Source: Macrostomum lignano
Lineage: Eukaryota
Length of the DNA stretch: 64,000 nucleotides
Direction: 5' to 3'
Assembly: GCA_002269645.1 (NCBI GenBank)
Contig: NIVC01000029.1
Coordinates: forward strand, 1,178,001-1,242,000
Numbering within the stretch: the first letter of the stretch is position 1; each line of letters starts with the position of its first letter. Of this stretch, positions 2,711 to 62,655 are shown one piece after another. Position numbers and translations under genes: made by a program. The notes under the pieces were generated by a model. It searched no databases, had not been told where the DNA came from, and was given only the letters and a program-made list of their open reading frames with translations.

Positions 2711-4433
2711 TTAAACGCCTTTGCGCGGCACAACACGGACCTTGAACCTGCGCGGCATGGCGAACAGTAGCGAAGAGGACTCTTTGTAACCATCTGAGTC
2801 CTTGAACTCCGGACTCTGGATGAACTTGAACGATTGAATCAGCAGCGTAGTGATTAAAAATGTCGTCTTCTTAGCGATCGACTCGCCAAGGCAGACCCGA
2901 GTGCCGGCGCCGAAGATGAAAAAGTTTCGATTGTAAGGCGCCAGTTCGCCGTTCTCAGTGAGGAAGTGCTCCGGCTTGAACGTGTGCGGATCCGGAAACG
3001 CTGTTGGATCATAATGGCACCGGTAAGTCGATAGCATCACCTGGGTGCCTCGAGGCAGCTGGTAGCCACCCAACTGACAATCTTCGTTGCACTCTCTCGG
3101 TATCAGGCCACCCAGAGGCCAGAAGCGCATCACCTCGTGCAGAAAAGCGTCGGTATACGGCAGGCGGTGTCGCTCCGACATTCTCGGAGTTGAGTCGCCG
3201 AATACAGAGTTCACCTCGGCGTAGCAGCGCTCCTGCATCTCTGGGAAGCTGCACAGGCCCCAGATGACCCAGTAGAGGGTCATAGCTGTGGTGTCTGTGC
3301 CAGCACCAAAAATATCCATCAGCGTTTGACGAAGGTGGACGTCTTGAAACAGGTGCCTGGGTGAATGACAAATAACGGATTCAATACTTATATTTGTTTT
3401 GCTGTCAGTAGTAGTTAGCTTTTTTACGGTACGGAAACTATTGCTTAATCATAACGAAAACAAGTTTTAATAATTGACAAGAAAAAGCTGCAACATGCTT
3501 ATAGTGATTAAAATAGCATAAAACTATTCACCCATTGCCAGACGCAATGGCCTGTCGCTGCTCTTGAATTAGAAAGTCCAAAATGTCGTTCAGCTCATTC
3601 GGGTTGAAGCTCGCCTTCCGTTTCTCGCACAGCATCTTGGCCCAGGACAGCAGTTCATCTGTAGCGTTGAAGAAACCGCGAATACTTTTTATTGGAAGAA
3701 ACCGAAGTATGGGCAGAGCATCAACTAGCAAGCCGCTCTGGAAGACCTGATTCAGATATTCAAGCGTTTTCCGAAGCCAAAGAAACTCGGGATCGTCTGG
3801 AGTGTACTCCGAGCCGAATGTCATCCGGCACTGCAGATTGTAGACCATTAAGTACACAGTTTCGTACACGTCTTTGTACTCGGAGTCCTGGTCTAAAAAG
3901 TACTTTGTGACACTATCGAACGAGTCAATGACGAACTGCTCGAGTCTCTCGCCCTGAGCAAACATCCTGAATGCGGCATAGGAGCTCTTGCGATGGTAGC
4001 GCCAGCGCTCGTTATTCGGGCTGCTGAAGATGCTGTTCATGCCCTCGGTGAAGTAGTTCAATGAGTAGAAACTCGTCATGCGATTGGTCAGCTTTGGGCT
4101 CAGCAAGCCTTCTTGAACAAGCTTTGGCTTGAGCACCAGAACGAAGGTCATTGGTCCAAAACTGACGGTGGTAATATCCCCATAATTTTCTGCCAGCTCA
4201 TCGAATGTACCAAAAATTTTAGCTCTGCCAGTGGCTTTCAACAGCTCGACATTGCCAATCAGCGGCCATCCGCGCGGACCTGGCGGCAGTTGAGAACGGC
4301 GCCTGAGACGCTGCACAAACCACAGGGTGGCCAGAGAGGCGCCTGCAATGGCAGCGACTGTGACAGCGGCTTTGCGGTTCTCGACTGGGACCAAACGGAT
4401 CGGCCACGCGTTTGTAGACAGCAGGGCCTGCAT
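2711..4433 (-). CDS. Cytochrome P450, clan-2-like, copy B; 2 exons (4433-3532, 3356-2711), about 515 aa
   Basis: Same motifs as copy A (AGTDT, EVMR, FGAGTRVCLG). The 175-bp phase-2 intron at 3357-3531 sits at the identical position. The two copies are highly similar tandem paralogs. Confidence 0.93.
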
Positions 4434-27900: not shown

Positions 27901-30900
27901 AGCATGCTTATGAAGTATAATTTGAGCAATATCCAAATCTCCCCATTTTGAGCAATCATCCAAATCGTCCCACATTGAGCAATTCCCTGAATCTTCCTAC
28001 GAGCTATTTTGAGCAATCCCCAAATCTTACCATATTGAGCAAATCTCCAAATATTCCCATTTTGAGAAATCCCCAAATCTTCCTATTTTGAGCAATCCCC
28101 AAATCTTCCCATTTTGAGCAATCCCCAAATCTTCCCATTTTGAGCAATCCCCAAATCTTCCCATTTTGAGCAATCCCCAAATCTTCCCATTTTGAGCAAT
28201 CCCCAAATCTTCCCATTTTGAGCAATCCCCAAATCTTCCCATTTTGAGCAATCCCCAAATCTTCCCATTTTGAGCAATCCCCAAATCTTCCCATTTTGAG
28301 CAATCCCCAAATCTTCCCATTTTGAGCAATCCCCAAATCTTCCCATTTTGAGCAATCCCAAAATCTTCCCATTTTGAGCAATCATCCAAATCTTCCCACA
28401 TTGAGCAATTCCCTAAATCTTCCTACGAGCTATTTTGAGCAATCCCCAAATCTTCCCATTTTGAGCAATCCCCAAATCTTCCCCCATTAGAGGAATCATT
28501 AAATCTCTCACATTTTTAGAAATTCACATTTTGAGCAATCCCCAAATCTTCCCATTTTGAGCAATCCCCAAATCTTCCCCCATTAGAGGAATCATTAAAT
28601 CTCTCACATTTTTAGAAATTCACATTTTGAGCAATCCCCAAGTCTTCCCATTTTGAGCAATCCCAAAATCTTCCCATTTTGAGCAATCATCCAAATCTTC
28701 CCACATTGAGCAATTCCCTAAATCTTCCTACGAGCTATTTTGAGCAATCCCCAAATCTTCCCATTTTGAGCAATCCCCAAATCTTCCCCCATTAGAGGAA
28801 TCAAAATCTCTCACATTTTTAGAAATTCACATTTTGAGCAATCCCCAAATCTTCCCCCATTAGAGGAATCATTAAATCTCTCACATTTTTAGAAATTCAC
28901 ATTTTGAGCAATCCCCAAATCTTCCCATTTTGAGCAATCCCCAAATCTTCCCCCATTAGAGGAATCATTAAATCTCTCACATTTTTAGAAATTCACATTT
29001 TGAGCAATCCCCAAGTCTTCCCATTTTGAGCAATCCCAAAATCTTCCCATTTTGAGCAATCATCCAAATCTTCCCACATTGAGCAATTCCCTAAATCTTC
29101 CTACGAGCTATTTTGAGCAATCCCCAAATCTTCCCATTTTGAGCAATCCCCAAATCTTCCCCCATTAGAGGAATCATTAAATCTCTCACATTTTTAGAAA
29201 TTCACATTTTGAGCAATCCCCCCAAATCTTACCATATTGAGCAAATCTCCAAATATTCCCATTTTGAGAAATTCCCAAATCTTCCCATTTTGAGCAATCC
29301 CCAAATCTTCCCATTTTGAGCAATCCCCAAATCATCCCATTTTGAGCAACCCCCAAATCATCCCATTTTGAGCAATCCCCAAATCTTCCCATTTTGAGCA
29401 ATCCCCAAATCTTCCCATTTTGAGCAATCCCCAAATCTTCCCATTTTGAGCAATCCCCAAATCTTCCCATTTTGAGCAATCATCCAAATCTTCCCACATT
29501 GAGCAATTCCCTAAATCTTCCTACGAGCTATTTTGAGCAATCCCCAAATCTTCCCATTTTGAGCAATCCCCAAATCTTCCCCCATTAGAGGAATCATTAA
29601 ATCTCTCACATTTTTAGAAATTCACATTTTGAGCAATCCCCAAGTCTTCCCATTTTGAGCAATCCCAAAATCTTCCCATTTTGAGCAATCATCCAAATCT
29701 TCCCACATTGAGCAATTCCCTAAATCTTCCTACGAGCTATTTTGAGCAATCCCCAAATCTTCCCATTTTGAGCAATCCCCAAATCTTCCCCCATTAGAGG
29801 AATCATTAAATCTCTCACATTTTTAGAAATTCACATTTTGAGCAATCCCCAAATCTTCCCATTTTGAGCAATCCCCAAATCTTCCCCCATTAGAGGAATC
29901 ATTAAATCTCTCACATTTTTAGAAATTCACATTTTGAGCAATCCCCCCAAATCTTACCATATTGAGCAAATCTCCAAATATTCCCATTTTGAGAAATTCC
30001 CAAATCTTCCCATTTTGAGCAATCCCCAAATCTTCCCATTTTGAGCAATCCCCAAATCTTCCCATTTTGAGCAATCCCCAAATCTTCCCATTTTGAGCAA
30101 TCCCCAAATCTTCCCATTTTGAGCAATCCCCAAATCTTCCCATTTTGAGCAATCCCCAAATCTTCCTCCTATTAGAGGAATCATTAAATCTCTCAAATTT
30201 TTAGAGTTTCCCATTTTGAGCAATCCCCAAATCTTCCCCCATTAGAGGAATCATTAAATCTCTCAAATTTTTAGAAATTCACATTTTGAGCAATCCCCAA
30301 CAAAAAATCTTTCCATTTTGAGCAATTTTGAAGAAAACTTCAAGTACATCTTGTTACTACAGACAGAAAAAGGCAAAAGAAAAGAAAACAATAGGCTACC
30401 AGCCAACGCTGCAGCCGAAGAAGCCATCGACGCCGAAGAAAATAATGACGAATTAGTAGAAGATGTCGACTGTCGGGGCGGAGGAGGAGGCGGCTGCGGC
30501 TGAGGCGGCTGCTGCTGCTGCTTCTGTCGTTTCCGACCACTTCGAGGAGTGTTGCTGGAGCCAGACTGATCAGACAACCCTGCATCAGTGCCCGAGCCAG
30601 TGTTGCAAGCCCGCTTGCGGTTGCCGCCAGAGGGCGGCGGCGGCGGGGGCGGCGGCGGCGGGGGCGGCGGCGGCGGCAGAATCTGCTGCTGCTGTCTGGC
30701 CTGAGACTCCGGGCCCGAGTCAATCACTATTGGCGGATCAGAGCCGACAAAATATGAAGGCTGCCGATAGTCGCTGGAGTACATTTATAAATGATTATAT
30801 ATTAATAAAAGCTAGCAAAGCCTGCATAGAAACTATTGCATGTATTAACTAGGGAGTTGTAGCCTAGTGGTCAGCGTCGAACTCACGACTTAGAGGTGGG

Positions 30901-33962: not shown

Positions 33963-34289
33963 TTTCTATTACTAATTTTGTATTAGAAAATAAAGTAAAG
34001 GAAACAATCTTTTAAAACTAAAAGAACAGACACACAAGAAGCAATAAGCAATAACTTAAAAGTAAACTCAAAAAAGTTTCTAGCATTAAGTATGAGAAAG
34101 CCGTTTATTACAATATATTAAGAATTTTATAGCCTATTAAATTGTAAGACACATTTCAGATTACCAAAAGCATTAAGCACAGTCCCATTTTATTACCTTT
34201 AGTTGCTAAGGGGCAGCGAGTTTCGGATTTGCAAATACAATTTCAAGTAGTTTTAATTGAGACTTCAATAGTAAGACTGGAACTTTTGT

Positions 34290-36596
34290 CTCAGAATGCG
34301 ATTCTAATTGGGGGGGGGGGGGTCAGAATGCGATTCTAATTGGGGGGGGTCAGAATGCGATTCTAATTGGGGGGGTTAGAATGCGATTCTAATTGGGGGG
34401 GGGGGGTCAGAATGCGATTCTAATTGGGGGGGGGGTCAGAATGCGATTCTAATTGGGGGGGTCAGAATGCGATTCTAATTGGGGGGGGTCAGAATGCGAT
34501 TCTAATTGGGGGGGGTTAGAATGCGATTCTAATTGGGGGGGGGTCAGAATGCGATTCTAATTGGGGGGGTCAGAATGCGATTCTAATTGGGGGGGGTCAG
34601 AATGCGATTCTAATTGGGGGGGGTCAGAATGCGATTCTAATTGGGGGGGGTCAGAATGCGATTCTAATTGGGGGGGGGTCAGAATGCGATTCTAATTGGG
34701 GGGGGGGGTCAGAATGCGATTCTAATTGGGGGGGGGTTAGAATGCGATTCTAATTGGGGGGGGGGTCAGAATGCGATTCTAATTGGGGGGGGGTCAGAAT
34801 GCGATTCTAATTGGGGGGGGGGGGTTAGAATGCGATTCTAATTGGGGGGGGGTTAGAATGCGATTCTAATTGGGGGGGTCAGAATGCGATTCTAATTGGG
34901 GGGGGGGTCAGAATGCGATTCTAATTGGGGGGGTCAGAATGCGATTCTAATTGGGGGGGGGGTCAGAATGCGATTCTAATTGGGGGGGTCAGAATGCGAT
35001 TCTAATTGGGGGGGGTTAGAATGCGATTCTAATTGGGGGGGGGTCAGAATGCGATTCTAATTGGGGGGGGGTCAGAATGCGATTCTAATTGGGGGGGGGG
35101 TTAGAATGCGATTCTAATTGGGGGGGGGTTAGAATGCGATTCTAATTGGGGGGGGGGTCAGAATGCGATTCTAATTGGGGGGGGTCAGAATGCGATTCTA
35201 ATTGGGGGGGGTCAGAATGCGATTCTAATTGGGGGGGGTTAGAATGCGATTCTAATTGGGGGGGGGTCAGAATGCGATTCTAATTGGGGGGGGGTCAGAA
35301 TGCGATTCTAATTGGGGGGGGGGTTAGAATGCGATTCTAATTGAGGGGGTCAAAATGCGATTCTAATTGGGGGGGGGTCAGAATGCGATTCTAATTGGGG
35401 GGGGGTCAGAATGCGATTCTAATTGGGGGGGGGTCAGAATGCGATTCTAATTGGGGGGGGGTCAGAATGCGATTCTAATTGGGGGGGGGTCAGAATGCGA
35501 TTCTAATTGGGGGGGGGGGTTAGAATGCGATTCTAATTGGGGGGGGTCAGAATGCGATTCTAATTGGGGGGGGTCAGAATGCGATTCTAATTGGGGGGGG
35601 GGGGTTAGAATGCGATTCTAATGGGGGGGGGGTTAGAATGCGATTCTAATTGGGGGGGGTCAGAATGCGATTCTAATTAGGGGGGGTCAGAATGCGATTC
35701 TAATTGGGGGGGGGGTCAGAATGCGATTCTAATTGGGGGGGGGGTTAGAATGCGATTCTAATTGGGGGGGGGGTCAGAATGCGATTCTAATTGGGGGGGT
35801 CAGAATGCGATTCTAATTGGGGGGGGGGGTTAGAATGCGATTCTAATTGAGGGGGTCAAAATGCGATTCTAATTGGGGGGGGGGTCAGAATGCGATTCTA
35901 ATTGGGGGGGGGGTCAGAATGCGATTCTAATTGGGGGGGGGTCAGAATGCGATTCTAATTGGGGGGGGGGTTAGAATGCGATTCTAATTGGGGGGGGGTC
36001 AGAATGCGATTCTAATTGGGGGGGGGGGGTCAGAATGCGATTCTAATTGGGGGGGGGGTTAGAATGCGATTCTAATTGGGGGGGGGTTAGAATGCGATTC
36101 TAATTGGGGGGGGGTCAGAATGCGATTCTAATTGGGGGGGGGGTCAGAATGCGATTCTAATTGGGGGGGTTAGAATGCGATTCTAATTGAGGGGGTCAAA
36201 ATGCGATTCTAATTGAGGGGGTCAAAATGCGATTCTAATTGGGGGGGGCGTCAGATTAATGCGATTCTAATTAGGGGGGGGTCAGAATGCGATTCTAATT
36301 AGGGGGGGGGGTCAGAATGCGATTCTAATTGAGGGGGGGTCAGAATGCGATTCTAATTGAGAGGGGGGTCAGAATGCGATTCTAATTGAGGGGGGGTCAG
36401 AATGCGATTCTAATTGAGGGGGGGTCAGAATGCGATTCTAATTGAGAGGGGGGGGTCAGAATGCGATTCTAATTAGGGGGGGGTCAGAATGCGATTCTAA
36501 TTGAGGGGGGGTCAGAATGCGATTCTAATTGAGGAGGGGTCAGAATGCGATTCTAATTGAGGGGGGGTCCGAACCCGAATGCGATTCTAATTGAGA
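34290..36596 (+). repeat. About 27-29-bp minisatellite CAGAATGCGATTCTAATT(G)7-12T between the DUF4807 gene and TP53BP1
   Basis: Roughly 80 copies with an invariant 18-bp core and a variable poly-G run. Confidence 0.97.
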
Positions 36597-36655
36597 TCGA
36601 AATTAAAATTCGTTTTCTTGGAAGTTGCTTTTTTAAAAGAAACAATGATCAGTCA

Positions 36656-38521
36656 TCAGACTTTGATGATAGCACCAACAATAGCAGACGTGTCATAAGA
36701 TCGATACAGTAACCTCTCCGATTGAGACGACTGTCCATTTTCCTTAGTCGCTATTGTTTCTGCTCCTAGTAGATATTTTCTAGACCGATCGAGTCGCCGC
36801 TTGATCTGAGCAGCTTGCAGCTTTCGCCAGACGCCCAGACACATGAGTCGAATCCTGGGATCCCCGGACACGTCCGGTCGCCTTACAGAAGCAACGTAAG
36901 CCGATCGAAGCAGCCTAGCAGCCCTGCTGATGAAGCCGCGCTGCAGCAGACTCTGAGCGTACCAGATACAGCAGCGGCACTGCAACTCGGCATCGTCCAA
37001 CTCCATAGCAACACGAAACTGTCGACAAGCAATTTCGCCAGCAATCGATGCAGCATCAGCAAACGAATCGCCCAGGTTGGAGAATCCGCCGCCCAGAGTT
37101 GATAGCCAAGCTAAAAGTGCATCCAAAGCAATTGCCCGACAAAGCAGGCTGAGCAGCCGGTCGAACCAAGCTAAATTAAGCGATCGATATGGTAGTAGCC
37201 AAGCCTGCCTAGCTAGCAGAATTGTAGCTTTTGACTTGCTCGATAGAAGATTATTTAATAACTGACATCCGTAAGGCGAGTTGGAGATGGATGTCAAAGC
37301 TACTGGTAGACTAGTTGGCACTAGGAGAACATTGATTTGTTTCTTCGCTTGTACCTGCCTAAGCTGCACACATTGCTCACAATGGCGCTTAATGCTGAGT
37401 TTCACTACTTGTAGTAGCGGCCGCGGTACATGACGATCTGACAAGCTGACAAGGTGACGGCACAGAGCTGCGCGATGGGAGAGGAAAAAGGACTTGTAAT
37501 AGACTGACTTTTATAGAAGATTATTCTTATAGACTTTTAAGTAGCTGAGATGCCAATTGGCTCACAATGGGGAGTTGCTGAGATGCCAATTGGCTCAATG
37601 GGGAGTTGCTGAGATGCCAATTGGCTCACAATGGGGAGTTGCTGAGATGCCAATTGGCTCACAATGGGGAGTTGCTGAGATGCCAATTGGCTCAATGGGG
37701 AGTTGCTGAGATGCCAATTGGCTCACAATGGGGAGTTGCTGAGATGCCAATTGGCTCACAATGGGGAGTTGCTGAGATGCCAATTGGCTCACAATGGGGA
37801 GTTGCTGAGATGCCAATTGGCTCAATGGGGAGTTGCTGAGACGCCAATTGGCTCACAATGGGGAGTTGCTGAGATGCCAATTGGCTCAATGGGGAGTTGC
37901 TGAGATTCCAATTGGCTCACAATGGGGAGTTGCTGAGATGCCAATTGGCTCAGTGGGGAGTTGCTGAGATGCCAATTGGCTCAATGCGGAGTTGCTGAGA
38001 TGCCAATTGGCTCAATGGGGAGTTGCTGAGATGCCAATTGGCTCAATGGGGAGTTGCTGAGATTCCAATTGGCTCACAATGGGGAGTTGCTGAGATGCCA
38101 ATTGGCTCAGTGGGGAGTTGCTGAGATGCCAATTGGCTCAATGCGGAGTTGCTGAGATGCCAATTGGCTCACAATGGGGAGTTGCTGAGATGCCAATTGG
38201 CTCAATGGGGAGTTGCTGAGATGCCAATTGGCTCAATGGGGAGTTGCTGAGATGCTAACTGGCTCAAATGGAGAGCTGATGTCCTATTCTGGAGAGCTAA
38301 ATAACAATGTCAATGCTACTCTGCCGTATTTGAATCTACGAGCCGTATAAAAAATTTGGCCGTAACTTACCATTGCAGCCGAATAGCCTTGATGCAATGC
38401 AGACATTGCCTAAATGTTCTTCTTCTTTAAGGTTAATTAACGATGATTGCAGAGCACCATCGGCAGAGCTCACTGACGATGGCAGATCGAACGGTCCTCG
38501 TTGGATTATCAAGATAGCCAT
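36656..38521 (-). CDS. DUF4807-family protein (C. elegans F58A4.6-like); 2 exons (38521-38371, 37467-36656)
   Basis: WLSTLGGGFSNLGD..AGEIACRQFRVA..QCRCCIWYAQSLLQRG..MCLGVWRKL matches the DUF4807 pattern as recalled. Phase-1 intron with GTAAGT donor and TCCCATCGCGCAG acceptor. Confidence 0.75.
37545..38270 (+). repeat. 31/33-bp minisatellite (GCTGAGATGCCAATTGGCTCACAATGGGGAGTT) in the DUF4807 gene intron
   Basis: About 22 copies in two length variants. Confidence 0.95.
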
Positions 38522-38644
38522 GAATATTGCGGATGTGGCACAGGTAGACTCTGGTCAGTTTTCATTTTTTAATAAAACACTTTTCATACTTGATCTTCTA
38601 TGATTAGAACTTTCAGAAGGTTTAAAATTTTGAAGTTGGGACTA

Positions 38645-39938
38645 GTGATTGGGATTCTTAGGTTAGGGATTAGGATTCTTAGGTTAGGGATTGGGATTCT
38701 TAGGTTAGAGATGGGATTCTTAGGTTAGGGATTGGGATTCTTAGGTTAGGGACTGGGATTCTTAGGTTAGGGATTGGGATTCTTAGGTTAGAGATGGGAT
38801 TCTTAGGTTAGGGATTGGGATTCTTAGGTTAGGGACTGGGATTCTTAGGTTAGGGACTGGGATTCTTAGGTTAGTGATTGGGATTCTTAGGTTAGGGACT
38901 GGGATTCTTAGGTTAGGGATTGGGATTCTTAGGTTAGGGATTGGGATTCTTAGGTTAGAGATGGGATTCTTAGGTTAGGGATTGGGATTCTTAGGTTAGG
39001 GACTGGGATTCCTAGGTTAGGGATTGTACTCTTAGGTTAGGGATTGGGATTCTTAGGTTAGGGACTGGGATTCTTAGGTTAGGGATTGGGATTCTTAGGT
39101 TAGAGATGGGATTCTTAGGTTAGGGATTGGGATTCTTAGGTTAGGGACTGGGATTCTTAGGTTAGGGACTGGGATTCTTAGGTTAGTGATTGGGATTCTT
39201 AGGTTAGGGACTGGGATTCTTAGGTTAGGGATTGGGATTCTTAGGTTAGGGATTGGGATTCTTAGGTTAGAGATGGGATTCTTAGGTTAGGGATTGGGAT
39301 TCTTAGGTTAGGGACTGGGATTCCTAGGTTAGGGACTGGGATTCCTAGGTTAGGGACTGGGATTCCTAGGTTAGGGATTGGGATTCTTAGGTTAGGGATT
39401 GGGATTCTTAGGTTAGAGATGGGATTCTTAGGTTAGGGACTGGGATTCTTAGGTTAGTGATTGGGATTCTTAGGTTAGTGATTAGGACTCTTAGGTTAGG
39501 GACTGGGATTCTTAGGTTAGGGACTGGGATTCCTAGGTTAGGGACTGGGATTCCTAGGTTAGGGACTGGGATTCCTAGGTTAGGGATTGGATTCTTAGGT
39601 TAGGGATTGGGATTCTTAGGTTAGAGATGGGATTCTTAGGTTAGGGACTGGGATTCTTAGGTTAGTGATTGGGATTCTTAGGTTAGTGATTGGGACTCTT
39701 AGGTTAGGGACTGGGATTCTTAGGTTAGGGACTGGGATTCCTAGGTTAGGGACTGGGATTCCTAGGTTAGGGACTGGGATTCCTAGGTTAGGGATTGGAT
39801 TCTTAGGTTAGGGATTGGGATTCTTAGGTTAGAGATGGGATTCTTAGGTTAGGGACTGGGATTCTTAGGTTAGGGACTGGGATTCCTAGGTTAGGGACTG
39901 GGATTCCTAGGTTAGGGACTGGGACTCTTAGGTTAGGG
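38645..39938 (+). repeat. 21-bp telomere-motif-containing minisatellite (TTAGGTTAGGGATTGGGATTC)
   Basis: About 60 copies; most units contain TTAGG directly followed by TTAGGG. Confidence 0.95.
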
Positions 39939-40559
39939 TCAGGCGGCAATGTACGATTGTACAAAACCTGATAATGTCACATAAAGTACAGGAAGGAACA
40001 CAAACTCAAACAAATACTTTTTCACGTAAAATATTTGCATGCTGAATAAAACAAAGTTAGCAGCGTTTTGCTTATTTTTTTCTAATTTCATTAAATTCTA
40101 ATTACCGTCCAAATTTCTTGCGTCATTTTATTCACGGGATAGTGGGAAACATTTGTTTTGATAAGGAGTTTAAAACGGCATAAAGACATCTAGACAACAA
40201 GAATTCAAATAGTTTGGCTATAATGGGCGCAATTCACATGATATTTAAGGCAAAGTTCAAAAAATCTCAAAGGATATAATGGCCAGACTAATAATCGCCA
40301 AATATCATTAGAATGTTAACAGTTTTCAGATTAAAAGTAGTCATCAGGCAACCAGCATTAAATATGAGTTAGTTTTCACAATTTTTTTTCAATGAAAACA
40401 AGATAGATACGATACTCGTAATGCAACGGCGTTAAAATCAATAACAGATTACCTAAACGTATTATTGTACTTTTAACATGATAAATAATAATTGGTCGAT
40501 GGAGGATTTGTAGCAACTGATACTGTGCAATCCACTGTCTTATTATCAGATGTACTAGC

Positions 40560-41025
40560 TAATCCCATCTGATTCCCACCTGATTAATCCCACCTGATCA
40601 ATCCCACCTGATTAATCCCACCTGACCAATCCCACCTGATCAATCCCACCTGATTAATCCCACCTGATTAATCCCACATGACCAATCCCACCTGATTAAT
40701 CCGACCTTATCAATCCCACCTGATTAATCCCACCTGACCAATCCCACCTGATTAATCCCACCTGATCAATCCCACCTGATTAATCCCACCTGATTAATCC
40801 CACCTGATTAATCCCACCTGATTAATCCCACCTGATCAATCCCACCTGATTAATCCCACCTGACCAATCCCACCTGACCAATCCCAACTGACCAATCCCA
40901 CCTGATCAATCCCACCTGACCAATCTCACCTGACCAATCCCACCTGACCAATCCTATCTGATTCTTACCTGACCAATCCCATCTATTGAATCAATCCCAC
41001 CTATCTAATCGACCCCACCTGATCA
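40560..41025 (+). repeat. 14-bp minisatellite (AATCCCACCTGATT) just downstream of the TIR-RHIM gene
   Basis: About 30 copies. Confidence 0.93.
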
Positions 41026-41146: not shown

Positions 41147-44100
41147 TCAAGCCTGTCGATAGTTTCCGCCGGTTCCGACTCCGCCGCCGCCCTGAGCTCC
41201 TTCAGCATCTTCGCCGCCTTGAGCATGCTGATGCGCCTCGGTAGCGCCCGCTACAAACTGCTGCACATAGGTGACGTGTACGTGAACAGTTTGACCTCGA
41301 ACTGACAGCTGATTAGCGCTGCCAACTTGAACATTTTCCGGATTATTAACCACCTGTTGGGCGGCGGCGGCAGCGGCAGCTTGCGGTTGCAGGAGAGGTT
41401 GCTGGCGCGGCTGCTGGATGGACTGCTGAGGCGTCTGCTGCATATCTACTTGAGAATTGCCCCTACTAACAGTAGCCATAGTAGCGTGACCAGAATCCAA
41501 CAGAGTCTGCTGGCTGCTAACTTCTTGCGGCTGCAGATCGGTCCGCTGCTCAGTTGACGGTAGCGGCTCGCCGTGGTGTTGCAGCACAGCGTCCAATGGG
41601 GCTCGCAAGCGTTTCACATCCTCTTCGGATAGGCGCATCCGTTCGGCGAAGAAGCTGGCCAGCTGGTCGATGAGGCGGGCGCCTTCGCGGTTGTTGGCCC
41701 GGGCGATTTCATCTCGAACCTGTTCGATCTGGGCGGTCTCCCGACTGCGGCGCTGGTTGAGGCGGGTGCGCAGTAGCTGGCGCACCCGGCCCAGCTGTTG
41801 GGAATAAGGGACATTGTTCACGATGCCTGCATAGCTGAGATGGCTGTATTCACGATGGGGACGGTTCTATTAACACTGAGACCAGTTCCTTCAAGATTGG
41901 AATCAATTTTTTAGGATCGGATCAGAATGGATCACTTTAGGATAGGGATGGATCACATCAGGATAGGGATGGATCACATCAGGATAGGGATGGATCACTT
42001 CAGGATAGGGATGGATCACATCAGGATAGGGATGGATCACATCAGGATAGGGATGGATCACATCAGGATAGGGATGGATCACATCAGGATAGGGATGGAT
42101 CACATCAGGATAGGGATGGATCACATCAGGATAGGGATGGATCACATCAGGATAGGGATGGATCACATCAGGATAGGGATGGATCACATCAGGATAGGGA
42201 TGGATCACATCAGGATAGGGATGGATCACATCAGGATAGAGATGGATCACTTCAGGATAGGGATGGATCACTTCAGGATCTATTACTTCATGATTGGTAT
42301 CAAGTGCTTCAGAATCGGGTTGAATTACTTCAGAATCGTGATCAATGACTTCAGAATCGGGATCCATTACTTCAGAATCCGGATCCATTACTTCAGAATC
42401 CGGATCAATTACTTTAGAATCGGGATCAATTACTTCAGGATCGGGATCAATTACTTCAGGATCGGGATCCGTTACTTCAGAATCGGGATCAGTTACTTCA
42501 GAATCGGGATCAGTTACTTCAGAATCGGGATCAATTACTTCAGAATCGGGATCAATTACTTAAGGATCGGGATCAGTTACTTCAGAATCGGGATCAGTTA
42601 CTTCAGAATCGGGATCAATTACTTCAGAATCGGGATCCATTACTTCAGGATCGGGATCAGTTACTTCAGAATCGGGATCAATTACTTTAGAATCGGGATC
42701 AATTACTTAAGGATCGGGATCAGTTACTTCAGAATCGGGATCAGTTACTTCAGAATCGGGATCAATTACTTCAGAATCGGGATCCATTACTTCAGGATCG
42801 GGATCAGTTACTTCAGAATCGGGATCAATTACTTCAGAATCGGGATCAATTACTTAAGGATCGGGATCAGTTACTTCAGAATCGGGATCAGTTACTTCAG
42901 AATCGGGATCAATTACTTCAGAATCGGGATCAATTACTTAAGGATCGGGATCAGTTACTTCAGAATCGGGATCAGTTACTTCAGGATCGGGATCAATTAC
43001 TTCAGAGTCGGGATCAAATACTTCAGGATCGGGATCAGTTACTTCAGAATCGGGATCAATTACTTCAGAGTCGGGATCAAATACTTCAGGATCGGGATAA
43101 ATCAGTTTTAATGTTACATAGTGACGCAGCTCTTACCTCGCCAGACCGCAATCCCAGCTGACGAGTCATCGGATCCATTTCAAGGCGCATGCCTCTCAGG
43201 TTTCTAAACAGAGCAGCCTCGGGAATGGACATGTCCTCTATGCTGTGCACATCGACTCCGGGAGCGAACACGGGCACAATGCGATTGCGCCGATCAGCTG
43301 ATCCCGAGACGCTCTCATTGTACAGCTCTTCGATGTAGCGAAGTCGCTCGGAGTTCTGCAAGAATTCGTTTGTCACGTAAATGAATACAAACGTGCTGCG
43401 ACTGTTGGCGGAGTTGAGCCAGGAGAGATAGCTGGCCTGCGGATTAAGGAGGGAGGGAGGAGCACGACAAGTAGACAGATTTCGGCTGAGAATTTTAACA
43501 AAGGAAAATAAACATAATAGTCTACTCGTTAGAGAGTATTTACCGACCTTTTTCCTATGTAACACTTCTCACTCTATCTCTCGCAAATCCCCATCTCTCC
43601 CTAATCCCCATCTCTCCCTAATCCCCATTTCTCCCTAATCTCCATCTCTCTAATCGCCATCTCTCTAATCGCCATCTCCTCTCTCTAATCCCTATCGCTC
43701 TCTAAAATACCCACCTCTCCCTAATCCTCATTCTCTTTATAATCCTTAAGTCTTTCTAACTATATACGAGTATCTCCCTAATCCCCATCTCTCCCAAATC
43801 CCCATCTCTCCCTAATCCCCATCTCTCCTTAATCTCCATCTCCTCTCTCTAATCCCTATCACACTCTAATACCCACCTCTCCCTAATCCTCATTCTCTTT
43901 CTAATCCTTAAGTCTTTCTAACTATATATCTCCCTAATCCCCATCTCTCCCAAATCCCCATCTCTCCCAAATCCCCATCTCTCCCTAATCCCCATCTCTC
44001 CTTAATCTCCATCTCCTCTCTCTAATCCCTATCACTCTCTAATACCCACCTCTCCCTAATCCTCATTCTCTTTCTAATCCTTAAGTCTTTCTAACTATAG

Positions 44101-44460
44101 ATCTTCCTAATCCCCATCCCTAATGCTCACGGATTCGCCAGCCAGCGGCTCGTTAACCAGAACCCTAGGCGCAGTGTTATCATCGAAGCGGATTTCCTGC
44201 AGCAGACTGCGCAGCGATTCCATGTCTGCCAGATCGTTATACCGATCGCCGACAATAACGATATCGTATTGAGGAATTAGCAGTCGGCCAGGCAGACGAT
44301 CCAATGGAAAGCCGCCCTCCTCAGCAACGGCTTGCAGGCGGGCTCTGAATTGGTCGGGCTCTTGATCGCCTCGAGGTGGACGGTAGTGCTCGCGCAACAC
44401 AGGCCGGGTGCCATCGTCTGGCTGGGGCAGATCTTCTGGCGGATTGCCTTCGTTTGGCAT
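41147..44460 (-). CDS. TIR-domain protein with a C-terminal RHIM motif (TRIF/TICAM-like architecture); 3 exons (44460-44131, 43436-43137, 41794-41147), about 425 aa
   Basis: Flavodoxin-like TIR pattern: YDIVIV (bA), PRVLV..PLAGES (bB/BB loop), STFVFIYVTNEF (bC), RIVPVF (bD). This is followed by a helical segment, a Q-rich linker and VVNNPENVQVGSANQLSV (RHIM-like). Both introns are phase 0 (330+300+648 nt). The TIR call rests on pattern recognition only. Confidence 0.72.
41925..43098 (+). repeat. Two adjacent 21-bp minisatellites (GGATAGGGATGGATCACATCA, 41925-42280; CAGAATCGGGATCAGTTACTT, 42330-43098) in TIR gene intron 2
   Basis: Read directly; a graded transition zone at 42270-42400 links the two. 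Confidence 0.95.
43585..44125 (+). repeat. CCCTAATCCCCATCTCT-based degenerate repeat with larger internal duplications, in TIR gene intron 1
   Basis: 17-bp motif; the block ending ..CTAATCCTTAAGTCTTTCTAACTATA occurs three times. Confidence 0.85.
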
Positions 44461-44574
44461 GTTATTTTATCAGCGACTGGGCAGCAATTGTTAAATATGG
44501 GCGAACCAAATGACATTTATATCATTCCTAATTAATTGTTGCAGAGCTCATATTTGACGTTGGCAGCAACAGAA

Positions 44575-45195
44575 GGGTGAGGGCTAGAGGGTGGGAAGGG
44601 TAGGGACTGGAGGGTGAGGAGGGTAGGGACTGGAGGGTGTGGAGGGTAGGGACTGGAGAGTGGGGAGGATAGGGACTGGAGGGTGGGGAGGGTAGGGACT
44701 GGAAGGTGGAAAGGGTAGGGACTGGAGGGTGGGGAGGGTAGGGACTGGAGGGTGGAGAGTGTAGGCACTGGAGGGTGGGAGGATAGGGACTGGAGGATGG
44801 AGAGGGTAGGGATTGGAGGGTGGAGAGGGTAGGGACTGGAGGATGGAGAGGGTAGGGACTGGAGGGTGGAGAGTGTAGGGACTGGAGGGTGGGAGGATAG
44901 GGACTGGAAGGTGGAGAGGGTAGGGATTGGAGGGTGGAGAGGGTAGGGACTGGAGGGTGGAGAGGGTAGGGATTGGAGGGTGGAGAGGGTAGGGATTGGA
45001 GGGTGGAGAGTGTAGGGATTGGAGGGTGGAGAGTGTAGGGACTGGAGGGTGGGAGGATAGGGACTGGAGGGTGGAGAGTGTAGGGACTGGAGGGTGGGAG
45101 GAAAGGGACTGGAAGGTGGAGAGGGTAGGGACTGGAGGGTGGAGAGTTTAGGGACTGGAGGGTGGAGAGTGTAGGCACTGGATGGGGACTTGAGG
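44575..45195 (+). repeat. 23-bp G-rich minisatellite (GAGGGTGGAGAGGGTAGGGACTG) between CMTR1 and the TIR gene
   Basis: About 26 copies. Confidence 0.95.
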
Positions 45196-46121: not shown

Positions 46122-53733
<7,612 letters not shown>

Positions 53734-60002: not shown

Positions 60003-61403
60003 ATGGCGCGGCGCAATCCAACGGTGCACAGAGATATCAAAGAGACAGTTGGCACCTTTTCTATGGAAAAAGACTTTAACACCTTTGTTGATCATTTTGA
60101 CCTGGTATGTAGGGAATACAACCTACAAAATCCAGAAAAAGCGCAACTGTTGCCACCACTCCTCCAAGGCACTGCACGAGAGATTTATGGTAAACTGGAC
60201 GCAGCAACACAGCAAAACTACCCAGCATTAATCATTCAACTGCGCGCACACTTCAACCGCTGTGGCACAAACAGGTCAGTGCTACTGCACAAGTTGCATA
60301 ACAGACGGATGCAGCCAACAGAATCCTTCCTGACCTTCGTGGACGATATACGTCAAATAATTAAGGCACTGCATCAGCCAACGCTGCCAGCTGCGGATCA
60401 GCCACCTCCAGGCGCAGCGGAGTTAGCCGCAAGAGAGCGACAACGATTGATGGACCGTGAACAAAACCTCATCCTGCACGTAATAAACAATGCACAGCCG
60501 TCACTGCGGGATAGACTTTTGCGCGAGAACATTGAAACCGAGGAAGACCTTTTACGGTGCGGAATGCAGTGGGAAGCAAGCGCTCTACTAATGACAACCG
60601 GCAACACAGAAGTGCAGAAACTGACACAGCAACTAAACAAGCTGATGCAACATCAAACAGCCGTTATCGCCGAACAAAAAAGACGAAATGAACGAGCCCA
60701 AGCCAGATGCTATTACTGTGGACGAGAAGGACACTACCAAATTAATTGTCCTCATCGGTCAACAAGAAATGACATGCCGCGACAGCCATTCAACAGACGG
60801 AAGCCGCAAAAACCATGGCAACAACATCAAAATTGGCAGCAGCAAAACACGAAACGCTTCGGAAACAATGGCTACAGACCGCGAAACGCCAGATACATGC
60901 CCAAGCAACCAACGCAAGCGATGCAACGATATGCAAACGCCATCACGTACACACCGGAAAGCGAACAGCAAGAGCAGCAAGTCTTCACGATAGACGACTT
61001 AGAAATGGACTTCACTATCAATGAAATCGACTGGCTCGATGCGGAGAGCAGCGAAAAGACAAAAAACATCAGCATGGTCGAAATGAAAGAAACTAACATT
61101 GACAGCGAAGAAGAAAAGACAGAAGTGAGCACAGAAAAAACATTGCCAAGCGACATCAATGAAAGAAAAGAAGAAACAAACAAAGGCAACGACAAGGAAC
61201 CGGCAACGAAGGATGACAACGAAAAAAGCAACGAAGGAAATGCAGAGATGGAAGAAGAACAGCAAGAAGAAAGCAGCGATCACGATTATGAGATGCACAA
61301 TGACGCTGATGACAACCGAGCCGCCGACAAAGAACATGAAGACGGAAGGCACAAAGGAATGGAAGAAAGAAATCTAAGCTCTTTCTGTGGCCTGTGGCGC
61401 TAA
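60003..61403 (+). CDS. gag: Retrotransposon Gag-like protein with CCHC zinc knuckle, 466 aa
   Basis: FNTFVDHFDLVC..KAQLLPPLLQGTAREIY..RRMQPTESFLTFVDDI capsid-like pattern; CYYCGREGHYQINC knuckle; acidic tail whose stop falls in the adjacent MITE repeat. Confidence 0.85.
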   Translation: MARRNPTVHRDIKETVGTFSMEKDFNTFVDHFDLVCREYNLQNPEKAQLLPPLLQGTAREIYGKLDAATQQNYPALIIQLRAHFNRCGTNRSVLLHKLHNRRMQPTESFLTFVDDIRQIIKALHQPTLPAADQPPPGAAELAARERQRLMDREQNLILHVINNAQPSLRDRLLRENIETEEDLLRCGMQWEASALLMTTGNTEVQKLTQQLNKLMQHQTAVIAEQKRRNERAQARCYYCGREGHYQINCPHRSTRNDMPRQPFNRRKPQKPWQQHQNWQQQNTKRFGNNGYRPRNARYMPKQPTQAMQRYANAITYTPESEQQEQQVFTIDDLEMDFTINEIDWLDAESSEKTKNISMVEMKETNIDSEEEKTEVSTEKTLPSDINERKEETNKGNDKEPATKDDNEKSNEGNAEMEEEQQEESSDHDYEMHNDADDNRAADKEHEDGRHKGMEERNLSSFCGLWR

Positions 61404-62115
61404 ACTGAGTGCCTGTGGCGCTAAAATGAGTGCCTGCGGCGCTAAAATGACTGCCTGCGGCGCTAAAATGAGTGTCTGTGGCGCTAAAATGAGTGCCTGT
61501 GGCGCTAAAATGAGTTTCTGCAGCGCTAAAATGAGTGCCTGCGGCGCTAAAATGAGTGTCTGTGGCGCTAAAATGAGTGCCTGTGGCGCTAAAATGACTG
61601 CCTGCGGCGCTAAAATGAGTGTCTGTGGCGCTAAAATGAGTGCCTGTGGCGCTAAAATGAGTTTCTGCGGCGCTAAAATGAGTGCCTGCGGCGCTAAAAT
61701 GAGTGTCTGTGGCGCTAAAATGAGTGCCTGTGGCGCTAAAATGAGTGCCTGTGGCGCTAAAATGAGTGCCTGCGGCGCTAAAATGAGTGCCTATGGCGCT
61801 AAAATGAGTGCCTGTGGCGCTAAAATGAGTGTCTGTGGCGCTAAAATGAGTGCCTATGGCGCTAAAATGAGTGCCTGTGGCGCTAAAATGAGTGTCTGTG
61901 GCGCTAAAATGAGTGCCTGCGGCGCTAAAATGAGTGCCTGCGGCGCTAAAATGAGTGCCTGCGGCGCTAAAATGAGTGTCTGTGGCGCTAAAAGGAATGC
62001 CTGCGGCGTTGAGATAAGTGCCTGCAGCGCTAAAATGAGTGCAAAATTTAGTCATGTGCATGTTGAATTCTTGGCTTTGTCCTTCCCCACCATAAAATCC
62101 ATGGCGACGCCCCTG
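61383..62115 (+). mobile_element. hAT-like minisatellite-carrying MITE, copy 2 (left end missing), with about 31 x 21-bp GGCGCTAAAATGAGTGCCTGT units
   Basis: The unique tail TTAGTCATG..GAATTCTTGGCTTTGTCC..CACC matches the reverse complement of about 19213-19255; terminal TGGCGACGCCCCTG at 62102-62115. Confidence 0.75.
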
Positions 62116-62655
62116 TTTATATAATTTAACATAACCCACCAGCAAGGCTAAAAGTCTTTGAAAAAGCTCTATTGATCATAAATATAGCAAGTTTGGATGG
62201 AATGCGATTCGATTTCGATCGAGAGTTCATACGATGAGAAGTGATACTGAAGTAGTAAAATATGAATGGATTTTTTGGCAAGAAAATTACAATTCATTTT
62301 TTCAGTATATAGTGGATACTTTCTTTAATTTCCAGAAACCTCAAGCGTTAGTTGCCACCTCTTTCTGGAGATCCTTGGGGCCCACCGACAGACAAGTTGC
62401 AGGCTATTGAACGACCTACTTGGTTACGCCCAAGGTATTCAGCAATTATGAGTGACTCCAACGTCTTCACTAATGGTCGGGGGTCATGTCTTTACACTTG
62501 CTGTAAAAAGCAAAAAAGTGCTGCTTATCTCACTGATAAGCAATTAGCTTGAGTCCGAACATAAAAGCCTGTGGTAGAAAAACTGTGCGTGACTACTGAA
62601 GACAGCCAAAAGATCAGACGCAAAAATAAACAGTTAATACAGCTAGAAAACTGCC

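What the first reader, a model, noticed from the sequence alone, without database searches (positions are those of the whole stretch)
41147..44460. TIR + RHIM protein: a TRIF/TICAM-type amyloid signalling adaptor in an apparent flatworm
Seen: the 425-aa model has an acidic, Pro-rich N-terminus, a TIR-like alpha/beta domain, a helical extension, a Q-rich disordered linker and then QVVNNPENVQVGSANQLSV (about 41298-41356). Known: RHIM cores are (I/V)Q(I/V/L)G with a preceding hydrophobic-NN and a following N-x-(M/L). Examples are RIPK3 ..NNCSGVQVGDNNYL.., RIPK1 ..NSTGIQIGAYNYM.. and TRIF ..HHAQMVQLGLNNHM.. These motifs form signalling amyloids. TIR + C-terminal RHIM is the TRIF layout, described in vertebrates and amphioxus. 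Inference: an amyloid-nucleating innate-immune or cell-death adaptor in a lineage where I know of no TRIF/necroptosis pathway, implying unidentified RHIM partners (receptor, kinase or pore-forming effector).
Basis: partly seen in the sequence, partly recalled or inferred. Interest (0 to 1): 0.82.

Follow-up and report, generated by a model that had tools for sequence, protein, structure and literature searches.

The report
Possible TIR–RHIM adaptor gene in Macrostomum
A transcribed, flatworm-only gene encodes a protein whose layout and short motifs resemble the vertebrate immune adaptor TRIF (a TIR-like domain followed by an amyloid-type RHIM motif), but the resemblance is statistically weak and no relatives outside this species could be found to confirm it.

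Summary
The sequence features are real. A three-exon, 425-aa gene lies on the minus strand (44460-41147). A 97%-identical, RNA-seq-based annotated copy exists in Macrostomum lignano (BOX15_Mlig032176g1). VQVGSANQL (aa 365-373) fits the published RHIM consensus exactly. It is the only such motif in the window, and composition-preserving shuffles give it with P of about 2-4e-4.

No database method recognises a TIR or a RHIM: Pfam, PDB sequence search, PADLOC, NCBIfam, phmmer against 1.84 billion proteins, and AlphaFold plus Foldseek all fail. Targeted tests are consistently suggestive:
- The predicted secondary-structure order is TIR-like.
- TRAM and TRIF are the two best of 18 pairwise comparisons.
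- With two TIR HMMs the domain outranks 165 decoys, and with the TICAM HMM it also beats genuine MyD88 and SARM1 TIRs.
- Every alignment uses the same register.

Human TRIF's TIR escapes the same libraries.

Against the reading: hhalign is not significant, a small RHIM HMM gives only P of about 0.02, and the TRIF N-terminal domain, pLxIS and TRAF6 motifs are absent. M. lignano has no TLRs, and no ortholog exists to test conservation.

Verdict: a plausible (about 0.4) TRIF-like adaptor, either divergent or convergent, not a demonstrable TICAM family member.

The parts
44131..44460 (-). Exon 1 (aa 1-110). It holds the start codon, the Pro-rich acidic disordered N-terminus (aa 1-57, 44290-44460) and the first third of the alpha/beta domain: strand A 'YDIVIVG', helix A, strand B 'RVLV' and the loop 'NEPLAGES'.
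   Evidence: ATG, GT donor, translation; composition; predicted secondary structure; alignment register to TIR box 1 and the BB loop.
43437..44130 (-). Intron 1, almost wholly minisatellite (17-bp and 173-bp units at 43576-44118).
   Evidence: GT..AG borders.
43137..43436 (-). Exon 2 (aa 111-210). It holds the rest of the alpha/beta domain: helix B, strand C plus helix C 'FVFIYVTNEFLQNSERLRYIEEL', strand D 'NRIVPVF', and the short helices and strands that follow.
   Evidence: Alignments to TRAM and to the TIR HMMs are in one register. The domain ranks first among 165 decoys with both HMMs.
41795..43136 (-). Intron 2, filled by two 21-bp minisatellite arrays (41927-42279 and 42276-43102). Its length differs in the homeolog (1342 versus 2646 bp).
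41576..41794 (-). Start of exon 3. It holds the long Arg/Glu-rich helical extension (aa 208-283, helices 208-262 and 267-283), a possible coiled coil or oligomerisation module.
   Evidence: DSSP on the model; the only segment with pLDDT above 50 is 253-275; composition.
41357..41554 (-). Q-rich, polar, disordered linker (aa 291-356) ending in a run of seven Ala.
   Evidence: 17 Q of 66; low hydropathy; no predicted structure apart from a short low-confidence helix over the Ala run.
41300..41356 (-). RHIM-like segment QVVNNPENVQVGSANQLSV (aa 357-375). The core VQVGSANQL lies at 41306-41332.
   Evidence: unique strict match; shuffle P=2-4e-4. Compared with human RIPK3 V450-L466 and the mutational map: V359, V365 and V367 match three of the four essential aliphatic positions, N361 matches N454, N371 matches N464 and L373 matches L466, but Q357 replaces V450. 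The small RHIM HMM gives only 1.9 bits.
41249..41299 (-). Val-rich, beta-prone extension RGQTVHVHVTYVQQFVA (aa 376-392). It has the highest beta propensity in the C-terminal 140 aa and could add further strands to an amyloid core.
   Evidence: propensity profile; low-confidence strands at 372-375 and 378-381.
41147..41248 (-). Gly/Ala/Gln-rich disordered tail (aa 393-425) and the TGA stop.

Best explanation
The locus is an expressed gene known so far only from Macrostomum. It encodes a cytosolic modular protein most simply read as a signalling adaptor.

Shown:
- the gene model
- RNA-seq-based transcript support in a homeologous copy
- the order of modules
- the exact match to the RHIM consensus

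Inferred:
- The roughly 150-aa alpha/beta domain is a highly divergent TIR-type fold with TICAM-like local motifs.
- That domain is recruited to, or oligomerises with, an upstream partner.
- The helical segment helps multimerise the protein.
- Multimerisation raises the local concentration of the C-terminal VQVG segment, which sits on a long disordered tether.
- The VQVG segment then forms a RHIM-type cross-beta assembly with itself or with another RHIM protein, and this passes the signal on to a kinase-type or cell-death-type effector.

Because M. lignano has no TLRs, the upstream partner cannot be a TLR. The protein would be TRIF-like in how it works, not a TRIF ortholog.
For: Gene reality:
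- The model has three exons with GT/AG borders and gives 425 aa.
- P0001 is 97% identical and has the same exon structure at a syntenic homeologous locus.
- That GenBank annotation derives from a genome-guided RNA-seq assembly (PMC5730564).

TIR-like domain:
- The predicted element order is strand-helix repeated, as in TIR strands A to E.
- The local alignment to PDB-verified TRAM runs from helix A to strand D, z=2.9-3.1. TRIF gives z=2.3. These are the top two of 18 comparisons.
- An 8-seed TIR HMM gives 5.0 bits, reached by 3 of 2000 shuffles.
- A TICAM HMM gives 6.7 bits, reached by 1 of 3000 shuffles.
- The domain ranks first among 165 non-TIR decoys with both HMMs. With the TICAM HMM it also scores above genuine MyD88 and SARM1 TIRs.
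- All alignments place YDIVIVG, the EPLAG loop, FVFIYVTNEFLQNS and RIVPV on box 1, the BB loop, strand C/helix C and strand D.
- Negative library results are weak evidence, because human and primate TRIF TIR is also missed by the precomputed Pfam table and by PADLOC.

RHIM-like motif:
- It matches the published consensus exactly and is unique in the window, with shuffle P=2-4e-4.
- Three of the four aliphatic positions essential for nucleation, and the flanking Asn residues, are conserved relative to RIPK3.
- It lies in a disordered tail next to a beta-prone Val-rich stretch. Known RHIMs also have unstructured flanks (PMC4262963).

Plausible partners:
- RIPK1-like proteins with a RHIM exist in spiralians (PMC12119088).
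Against: - No significant hit to any TIR or RHIM model in Pfam (no hit on record), PDB, PADLOC, NCBIfam or PHROGs.
- hhalign gives P=0.06-0.11 and a probability below 1%.
- Six other TIRs score no better than non-TIR controls in pairwise comparison. One control, Rac1, reaches z=2.1.
- The AlphaFold models have low confidence (pLDDT 32 and 56), and Foldseek finds no TIR at E<=10 in its top 50 hits.
- The small RHIM HMM gives 1.9 bits, P of about 0.02.
- The -8 aliphatic position is Gln in this protein.
- The strict motif is expected about 10 times by chance in a proteome of about 1.8e7 residues (my own calculation from typical residue frequencies).
- No ortholog is known, so no conservation test is possible. 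The two copies differ too little for a selection test: dS=0.023, with 7 synonymous and 13 non-synonymous differences.
- M. lignano has no TLRs.
- No second RHIM-like motif occurs in 64 kb, and the neighbouring genes are housekeeping.
Confidence: 0.4

Rival explanations
1. This is a lineage-specific orphan protein. Its alpha/beta domain is not a TIR, and its Q/V/N-rich low-complexity tail contains VQVGSANQL by chance. It has no amyloid or innate-immune role.
For: - Every unbiased search is negative.
- hhalign is not significant.
- Six of eight TIRs are indistinguishable from controls in pairwise comparison.
- The RHIM HMM gives P of about 0.02.
- Chance matches to the strict motif are expected in any proteome (about 10, my calculation).
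- The tail is compositionally biased toward Q, V and N.
Against: - Two independent weak signals point to the same known architecture.
- The TICAM-specific signal ranks first among 165 decoys in two HMM tests.
- Alignments obtained by four methods share one register.
- The strict motif is rare even given this composition.
Confidence: 0.33
2. The TIR-like domain is real, but the VQVG motif is incidental. The protein is a TIR-only adaptor, or a NAD-cleaving TIR enzyme, with a coiled coil and a disordered tail.
For: - The TIR-directed tests are somewhat stronger and more consistent than the RHIM HMM test.
- Orphan TIR-domain proteins are common in spiralians (PMC9334734).
- Glu residues E146 and E147 lie within a residue or two of the catalytic-Glu position when 'NSERLRYIEEL' is set against TLR2 'SEWCKYEL'. 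This is my reading and is not resolved.
Against: - The motif fits the consensus exactly, including the flanking positions -6, -4, +6 and +8.
- It sits in a beta-prone island within a disordered tail, about 150 aa after the domain, as in TRIF (TRIF layout from PMC9440496).
Confidence: 0.15
3. The amyloid motif is real, but the N-terminal domain is a different effector or interaction fold. The protein would then work like fungal HET-s or bacterial BASS effectors, which are switched on when a receptor carrying a matching motif templates them.
For: - The layout, a globular domain plus a C-terminal amyloid-type motif on a disordered linker, matches those systems (PMC13506858; PMC4262963).
- TIR identity is unproven.
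Against: - No partner gene with a matching motif lies in the 64-kb window or at the homeologous locus.
- The neighbours are a G-patch/FtsJ gene and a DUF4807 gene.
- The domain's best similarities are to TICAM TIRs.
Confidence: 0.1
4. The gene model is an artefact: the exon carrying the RHIM-like motif does not belong to the same transcript as exons 1 and 2.
For: - The introns are minisatellite arrays that could mislead gene predictors.
- P0002 and P0003 are visibly defective models with skipped or frameshifted stretches.
Against: - The splice sites are canonical and keep the reading frame.
- The same three exons are joined in the RNA-seq-derived GenBank model of the homeolog.
- All three database models join the domain exons to the RHIM exon.
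Confidence: 0.02

Closest known systems
TRIF / TICAM1 (vertebrates) and its paralog TRAM / TICAM2
   Same: - A TIR-type domain is followed, about 150 residues later, by a C-terminal [IV]Q[ILV]GxxNx[MLI] motif in a disordered region.
- The best pairwise and HMM similarities of the alpha/beta domain are to TRAM and TRIF.
- Like TRIF's TIR, the domain escapes generic TIR models.
   Different: - There is no statistically secure homology.
- The TRIF N-terminal helical domain, the pLxIS motif and TRAF6 motifs are absent.
- A long helical segment sits between the domain and the motif.
- Pfam RHIM does not hit this protein.
- The host has no TLRs.
- The protein is 425 aa, against 712 aa for TRIF (my knowledge).
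bbtTICAM of amphioxus
   Same: It is a non-vertebrate TIR adaptor reported to signal through a RHIM to RIP1 (cited in PMC9444067; PMC9440496).
   Different: It is from a chordate and is recognisably a TICAM. PMC9440496 did not find the RHIM motif in Leptocardii by its own criteria. I made no sequence comparison here because the sequence was not at hand.
Spiralian RIPK1-like proteins (zebra mussel, Lingula)
   Same: They show that canonical RHIM tetrads exist in Spiralia, the clade that includes flatworms (PMC12119088). They are candidate partners.
   Different: Their architecture is kinase plus RHIM plus death domain, not TIR. None is reported from Platyhelminthes in that paper's text, and a search of its supplements for Macrostomum found nothing.
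Drosophila IMD-pathway cryptic RHIMs (PGRP-LC, PGRP-LE, Imd, Pirk)
   Same: It is an invertebrate innate-immune pathway in which amyloid signalling runs through short RHIM-like motifs without causing cell death (PMC13506858).
   Different: Those motifs are degenerate (VxxG) and sit in PGRP or death-domain proteins. The motif here is a full canonical VQVG..N.L.
Fungal HET-s/NWD2 and bacterial BASS amyloid signalling
   Same: A globular effector carries a terminal amyloid motif on a disordered linker, and the motif is related to the RHIM (PMC4262963; PMC13506858).
   Different: Those systems pair neighbouring genes that carry matching motifs. No such neighbour is present here.

Membership tests
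TIR domain superfamily | Significant match to a TIR profile (Pfam TIR or TIR_2, or another curated model) | tested here: not met
   - No Pfam hit is on record for P0001.
- PADLOC gives no families, NCBIfam gives no TIR match, and PDB phmmer finds nothing at E<=10.
- My own TIR HMMs give only 5.0 and 6.7 bits, and hhalign gives P=0.06-0.11.
- Caveat: primate TRIF also lacks a Pfam TIR entry in the same table, and human TRIF TIR gets no PADLOC hit.
TIR domain superfamily | Flavodoxin-like fold with five parallel strands alternating with five helices | tested here: inconclusive
   The predicted element order fits: strands at aa 67-70, 100-102, 125-131 and 161-167 with helices between them. However, the models have pLDDT 32 and 56, and Foldseek against the PDB gives no hit with E<=0.001 and no TIR among its top 50.
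TIR domain superfamily | Box 1, box 2 (BB loop) and box 3 sequence motifs in order | tested here: inconclusive
   - Box-1-like YDIVIVG, BB-loop-like NEPLAGES, strand C/helix C FVFIYVTNEFLQNSE and strand D RIVPV align in register.
- No box 3 'FW' is seen.
- The rank-first result against 165 decoys supports the match but does not prove it.
TICAM (TRIF/TRAM) family | Demonstrable homology of the TIR domain to TICAM1 or TICAM2 | tested here: inconclusive
   - TRAM (z=3.1) and TRIF (z=2.3) are the top two of 18 comparisons.
- The TICAM HMM gives 6.7 bits, reached by 1 of 3000 shuffles.
- phmmer from this protein finds no TICAM in 1.84 billion representatives, and hhalign is not significant.
TICAM (TRIF/TRAM) family | TRIF N-terminal helical domain, pLxIS motif and TRAF6-binding motifs | tested here: not met
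   The N-terminus is a 57-aa Pro-rich acidic segment with no Pfam hit. Regex scans find no pLxIS, no PxExx[aromatic/acidic] and no TRAF2 motif.
TICAM (TRIF/TRAM) family | Acts downstream of TLR3 or TLR4 | not testable with these tools
   The literature reports 0 TLRs in the M. lignano genome (PMC8609888). This argues against the feature, but I did not test it here.
RHIM (PF12721) | Core tetrad (V/I)-Q-(V/I/L/C)-G and the extended consensus [IV]Q[ILV]GxxNx[MLI] | tested here: met
   VQVGSANQL at aa 365-373. The definitions come from PMC9444067 and PMC9440496.
RHIM (PF12721) | Match to a RHIM profile across the 18-22-residue motif | tested here: not met
   PF12721 is on record for TRIF hits P0008, P0021 and P0100 but not for P0001. 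The 4-sequence RHIM HMM aligns only 8 residues and gives 1.9 bits, which 2% of shuffles reach. PDB phmmer of the C-terminal 60 aa finds no RHIM chain.
RHIM (PF12721) | The aliphatic tetrad needed for nucleation (hRIPK3 V450, I452, V458, V460) | tested here: inconclusive
   Three of four positions are conserved (V359, V365, V367), and Q357 stands in place of V450. This comes from aligning the protein to verified RIPK3 and using the mutational map in 10.64898/2026.02.19.706818.
RHIM (PF12721) | Forms amyloid and binds other RHIMs in a tetrad-dependent way | not testable with these tools
   This needs ThT/EM, a nucleation assay or co-assembly experiments.
HET-s/BASS-type paired amyloid signalling | A receptor gene carrying a matching motif, usually adjacent | tested here: not met
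   No second strict or near-strict motif occurs in the six-frame translation of the window or of L001. The neighbours are a G-patch/FtsJ gene and a DUF4807 gene. The rest of the genome could not be searched.

The most novel reading that the evidence does not exclude
A flatworm that has lost all TLRs still has a TIR-RHIM adaptor with no detectable sequence homology to chordate TICAMs. On this reading, coupling TIR oligomerisation (possibly NAD-cleaving) to RHIM amyloid nucleation is either older than chordates or evolved twice. The adaptor would feed an undescribed spiralian RHIM network, for example a RIPK1-like kinase or the kinase-prodomain caspase reported in M. lignano (PMC11463336).
Probability: 0.3. 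Interest if true: 0.8.

Novelty: new variant of a known kind. Interest (0 to 1): 0.5.

Why it matters
RHIM amyloid signalling and TIR adaptors are central to vertebrate cell-death and antiviral pathways. The TIR-RHIM combination is held to have arisen in chordates (PMC9334734; PMC9440496).

A working TIR-RHIM protein in an early-branching, TLR-less flatworm would push the origin of that coupling back, or show that it evolved convergently. It would point to unknown RHIM partners in Spiralia. It would also provide a genetically tractable model for functional amyloid signalling in immunity or regeneration, since M. lignano is transgenic-capable and RNAi-amenable (my knowledge).

If the motifs are coincidental, the locus is simply one of many Macrostomum orphan genes.

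Tried and rejected
1. Homolog searches. I searched with the full protein and with aa 46-290 against 5.8 billion proteins, and with phmmer against 1.84 billion representatives. Only M. lignano copies came back, so no deep alignment and no conservation test were possible.

2. Structure prediction. AlphaFold on the full-length 4-row alignment gave pLDDT 32. The domain alone gave pLDDT 56 and pTM 0.50. Foldseek against the PDB returned only noise, such as MIF/tautomerase at E of about 0.1-1.

3. Family libraries. PADLOC, NCBIfam and PHROGs gave nothing relevant.

4. Last homolog search. I spent it on a chimeric query (TRAM TIR + TRIF TIR + the C-terminal segment), hoping also to catch RHIM partners. 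Only the best 120 of 334 hits were listed, and all were mammalian TICAMs. Any weak RHIM-only hit was lost, and the resulting TICAM profile is shallow because it covers mammals only.

5. Selection test. dN/dS between the window copy and the homeolog is uninformative: only 20 differences, dS=0.023.

6. Literature. I searched for the locus tag, and for Macrostomum in the RIPK paper's supplements. Nothing was found.

7. Rejected: gene-model artefact (see rivals).

8. Rejected: the name 'SGNH domain' on P0003 as evidence of function. Its N-terminus includes the out-of-frame ORF 44277-44516.
Full report
**What is there**

The minus strand of 41147-44460 carries a three-exon gene: 44460-44131, 43436-43137 and 41794-41147. 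The borders are canonical GT/AG and the frame is intact. Both introns and both flanks are almost pure minisatellite, with 14-, 17-, 21-, 23- and 173-bp units.

The organism is the flatworm Macrostomum lignano. The only homologs among 5.8 billion proteins are three M. lignano entries:
- P0001 is hypothetical protein BOX15_Mlig032176g1, 423 aa and 97% identical.
- P0002 and P0003 are two visibly defective UniProt models.

P0001 lies on a 345-kb GenBank contig at a syntenic locus, with a G-patch/FtsJ gene upstream and a DUF4807 gene downstream. It has the same three exons. That GenBank annotation was derived from a genome-guided RNA-seq assembly (PMC5730564). The join of the RHIM exon to exons 1-2 is therefore transcript-supported in a homeologous copy, and the artefact rival can be set aside.

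**Module order**

| Residues | Feature |
|---|---|
| 1-57 | Pro-rich and acidic, disordered |
| about 65-205 | Alternating predicted strands and helices |
| 208-283 | Long Arg/Glu-rich helices |
| 291-356 | Q-rich linker ending in seven Ala |
| 357-392 | Val/Gln/Asn-rich, beta-prone island |
| 393-425 | Gly-rich tail |

There is no signal peptide or hydrophobic span by direct reading.

**The RHIM-like motif**

VQVGSANQL (aa 365-373, window 41306-41332) fits [IV]Q[ILV]GxxNx[MLI], the definition used in PMC9440496. It also fits the core tetrad definition in PMC9444067.
- It is the only strict match in the six-frame translation of the window and of the homeologous locus.
- Shuffling the protein's own residues yields the strict motif with P=4e-4 for the whole protein and 2e-4 for the C-terminal 130 aa.

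I aligned the segment to human RIPK3, whose sequence I verified against PDB chains. I then used the deep-mutational map of RIPK1 and RIPK3.
- V359, V365 and V367 match three of the four aliphatic residues essential for nucleation (I452, V458, V460).
- N361 matches N454, N371 matches N464, and L373 matches L466.
- Q357 replaces V450, and the aromatic residue before the final Leu/Met is Gln.

Softer tests are less kind.
- A 4-sequence vertebrate RHIM HMM aligns only eight residues at 1.9 bits, which 2% of shuffles reach.
- Pfam PF12721 is on record for primate TRIF but not for this protein.
- The C-terminus hits no RHIM chain in the PDB.
- By my own calculation from typical residue frequencies (about 5.5e-7 per position), roughly ten chance matches to the strict motif are expected in a proteome of this size.

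**The TIR question**

Unbiased methods do not call a TIR.
- No Pfam hit is on record.
- phmmer against the PDB finds nothing at E<=10.
- PADLOC, NCBIfam and PHROGs are negative.
- phmmer of aa 46-290 against 1.84 billion representatives finds only the protein's own paralog.
- The AlphaFold models have low confidence (pLDDT 32 full-length; 56 with pTM 0.50 for the domain alone). Foldseek against the PDB returns noise and no TIR.

For hypothesis-driven tests I assembled TIR sequences and verified each against PDB chains. These were TRAM and TRIF, and MyD88, TLR1, TLR2, TLR10, MAL and SARM1. I also collected 120 mammalian TICAM sequences. Results:

| Test | Result |
|---|---|
| Smith-Waterman vs TRAM | z=2.9-3.1, colinear from helix A to strand D |
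| Smith-Waterman vs TRIF | z=2.3 |
| Six other TIRs | z<=1.0, same as ten non-TIR alpha/beta controls |
| Control Rac1 | z=2.1 |
| 8-seed TIR HMM | 5.0 bits; 3 of 2000 shuffles reach it |
| TICAM HMM | 6.7 bits; 1 of 3000 shuffles reach it |
| hhalign | P=0.06-0.11, probability below 1% |
| Calibration with both HMMs | First among 165 decoys (controls, window ORFs, its own reverse) |
| Calibration with TICAM HMM | Above genuine MyD88 (4.0 bits) and SARM1 TIRs |

TRAM and TRIF are the two best of the 18 pairwise comparisons.

Every alignment uses the same register:
- YDIVIVG on box 1
- NEPLAGES on the BB loop
- FVFIYVTNEFLQNSE on strand C and helix C
- NRIVPV on strand D

The negatives also need calibrating. 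Primate TRIF carries no Pfam TIR entry in the same precomputed table. Human TRIF TIR gets no PADLOC hit, and TRAM only E=0.0055.

My reading is that a divergent TIR-type fold with TICAM-like local motifs is more likely than not, at about 0.65-0.7. It is not demonstrated.

**What argues against a literal TRIF**

- There is no TRIF N-terminal domain, no pLxIS and no TRAF6 or TRAF2 motif.
- M. lignano has no TLRs (PMC8609888).
- TICAMs are regarded as a chordate invention (PMC9334734).
- No partner with a matching motif lies nearby.

There are no orthologs in the databases. The homeologous copies differ by only 20 nucleotides (dS=0.023; 7 synonymous and 13 non-synonymous), with none in aa 356-425. 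That last point is not significant at this level of divergence.

**Context that helps the hypothesis**

- RIPK1-like proteins with kinase, RHIM tetrad and death domain occur in spiralians such as zebra mussel and Lingula (PMC12119088).
- A heterogeneous set of RHIM-bearing immune proteins exists in amphioxus and in some other invertebrates (PMC4262963).
- cRHIM amyloid signalling operates in insects and crustaceans (PMC13506858).

A RHIM network in the spiralian ancestor is therefore plausible.

**Mechanism proposed (inferred)**

1. The TIR-like domain is recruited by, or co-oligomerises with, an upstream non-TLR partner.
2. The helical segment promotes multimerisation.
3. This concentrates the tethered VQVG/Val-rich segment.
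4. That segment nucleates a RHIM-type cross-beta assembly with itself or with another RHIM protein, and so propagates the signal.

I put this at about 0.4. The main rival, an orphan protein with coincidental motifs, is at about 0.33. A real TIR with an incidental motif is at about 0.15. A real amyloid motif on a non-TIR effector is at about 0.1.

**Verdict**

The protein is not a demonstrable member of the TICAM family or of Pfam RHIM. If it works as proposed, it is a new variant of a known kind: a TIR-RHIM adaptor outside chordates, in a TLR-less animal. The decisive steps are ortholog recovery from Macrostomum transcriptomes, profile and structure searches on that alignment, a proteome-wide RHIM scan, and a VQVG-dependent fibril assay.

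Noticed in passing
window 102-1785 and 2711-4433 (minus strand): Two tandemly duplicated two-exon cytochrome P450 genes. Both have near-identical N-terminal ORFs and carry the haem-binding signature FGAGTRVCLGE.
   Followed up: no
window 60003-61403 (plus strand): A 466-aa ORF with a CCHC zinc knuckle (CYYCGREGHYQINCPH) and an acidic tail. It looks like the gag of a retrotransposon. It is followed by an A/G-rich minisatellite that is read as long ORFs on both strands (61156-62145).
   Followed up: no
window about 50900-53733 (minus strand); L001 931-7992: A G-patch plus FtsJ methyltransferase gene, similar to a cap 2'-O-methyltransferase, lies upstream of the finding. It is syntenic in the homeologous GenBank contig at 88-97% nucleotide identity, and its introns are packed with minisatellites.
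   Followed up: partly
window 17717-18118, 19498-20103 and 21081-22073 (plus strand): ORFs with a thyroglobulin-type-1-like Cys pattern (QC...CFCV) and an EF-hand-like loop (DLDGDGQLNYRE / DVSRDGQLDRKE). They suggest two neighbouring paralogs resembling SPARC or testican. This is read from the sequence only.
   Followed up: no
window 40574-40962, 41927-43102, 43576-44118 and 44574-45182: The gene is embedded in strand-asymmetric minisatellites with 14-, 21-, 17/173- and 23-bp units. These fill both introns and both flanks and create long spurious ORFs on both strands. Intron lengths differ strongly between the homeologs: 694 and 1342 bp here, against 494 and 2646 bp.
   Followed up: partly
P0003 (UniProt A0A1I8F5C6) versus window 44277-44516: The database model named 'SGNH domain-containing protein' is a chimera. 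Its N-terminal part includes the out-of-frame ORF that overlaps exon 1 (…TTVHLEAIKSPTNSEPACK…), so its name says nothing about this gene.
   Followed up: yes
protein hits P0008, P0021 and P0100: In the precomputed Pfam table, primate TRIF entries carry only PF12721 (RHIM) and no TIR family. Absence of a Pfam TIR call is therefore weak evidence against TICAM-type TIR domains in general.
   Followed up: partly
window 28000-30000 and 34000-40000: These stretches have extreme GC skew (-0.56, and +0.25 to +0.57) that coincides with long minisatellite tracts. This fits the repeat-rich M. lignano genome, in which simple and tandem repeats make up about 15% (PMC5730564).
   Followed up: no
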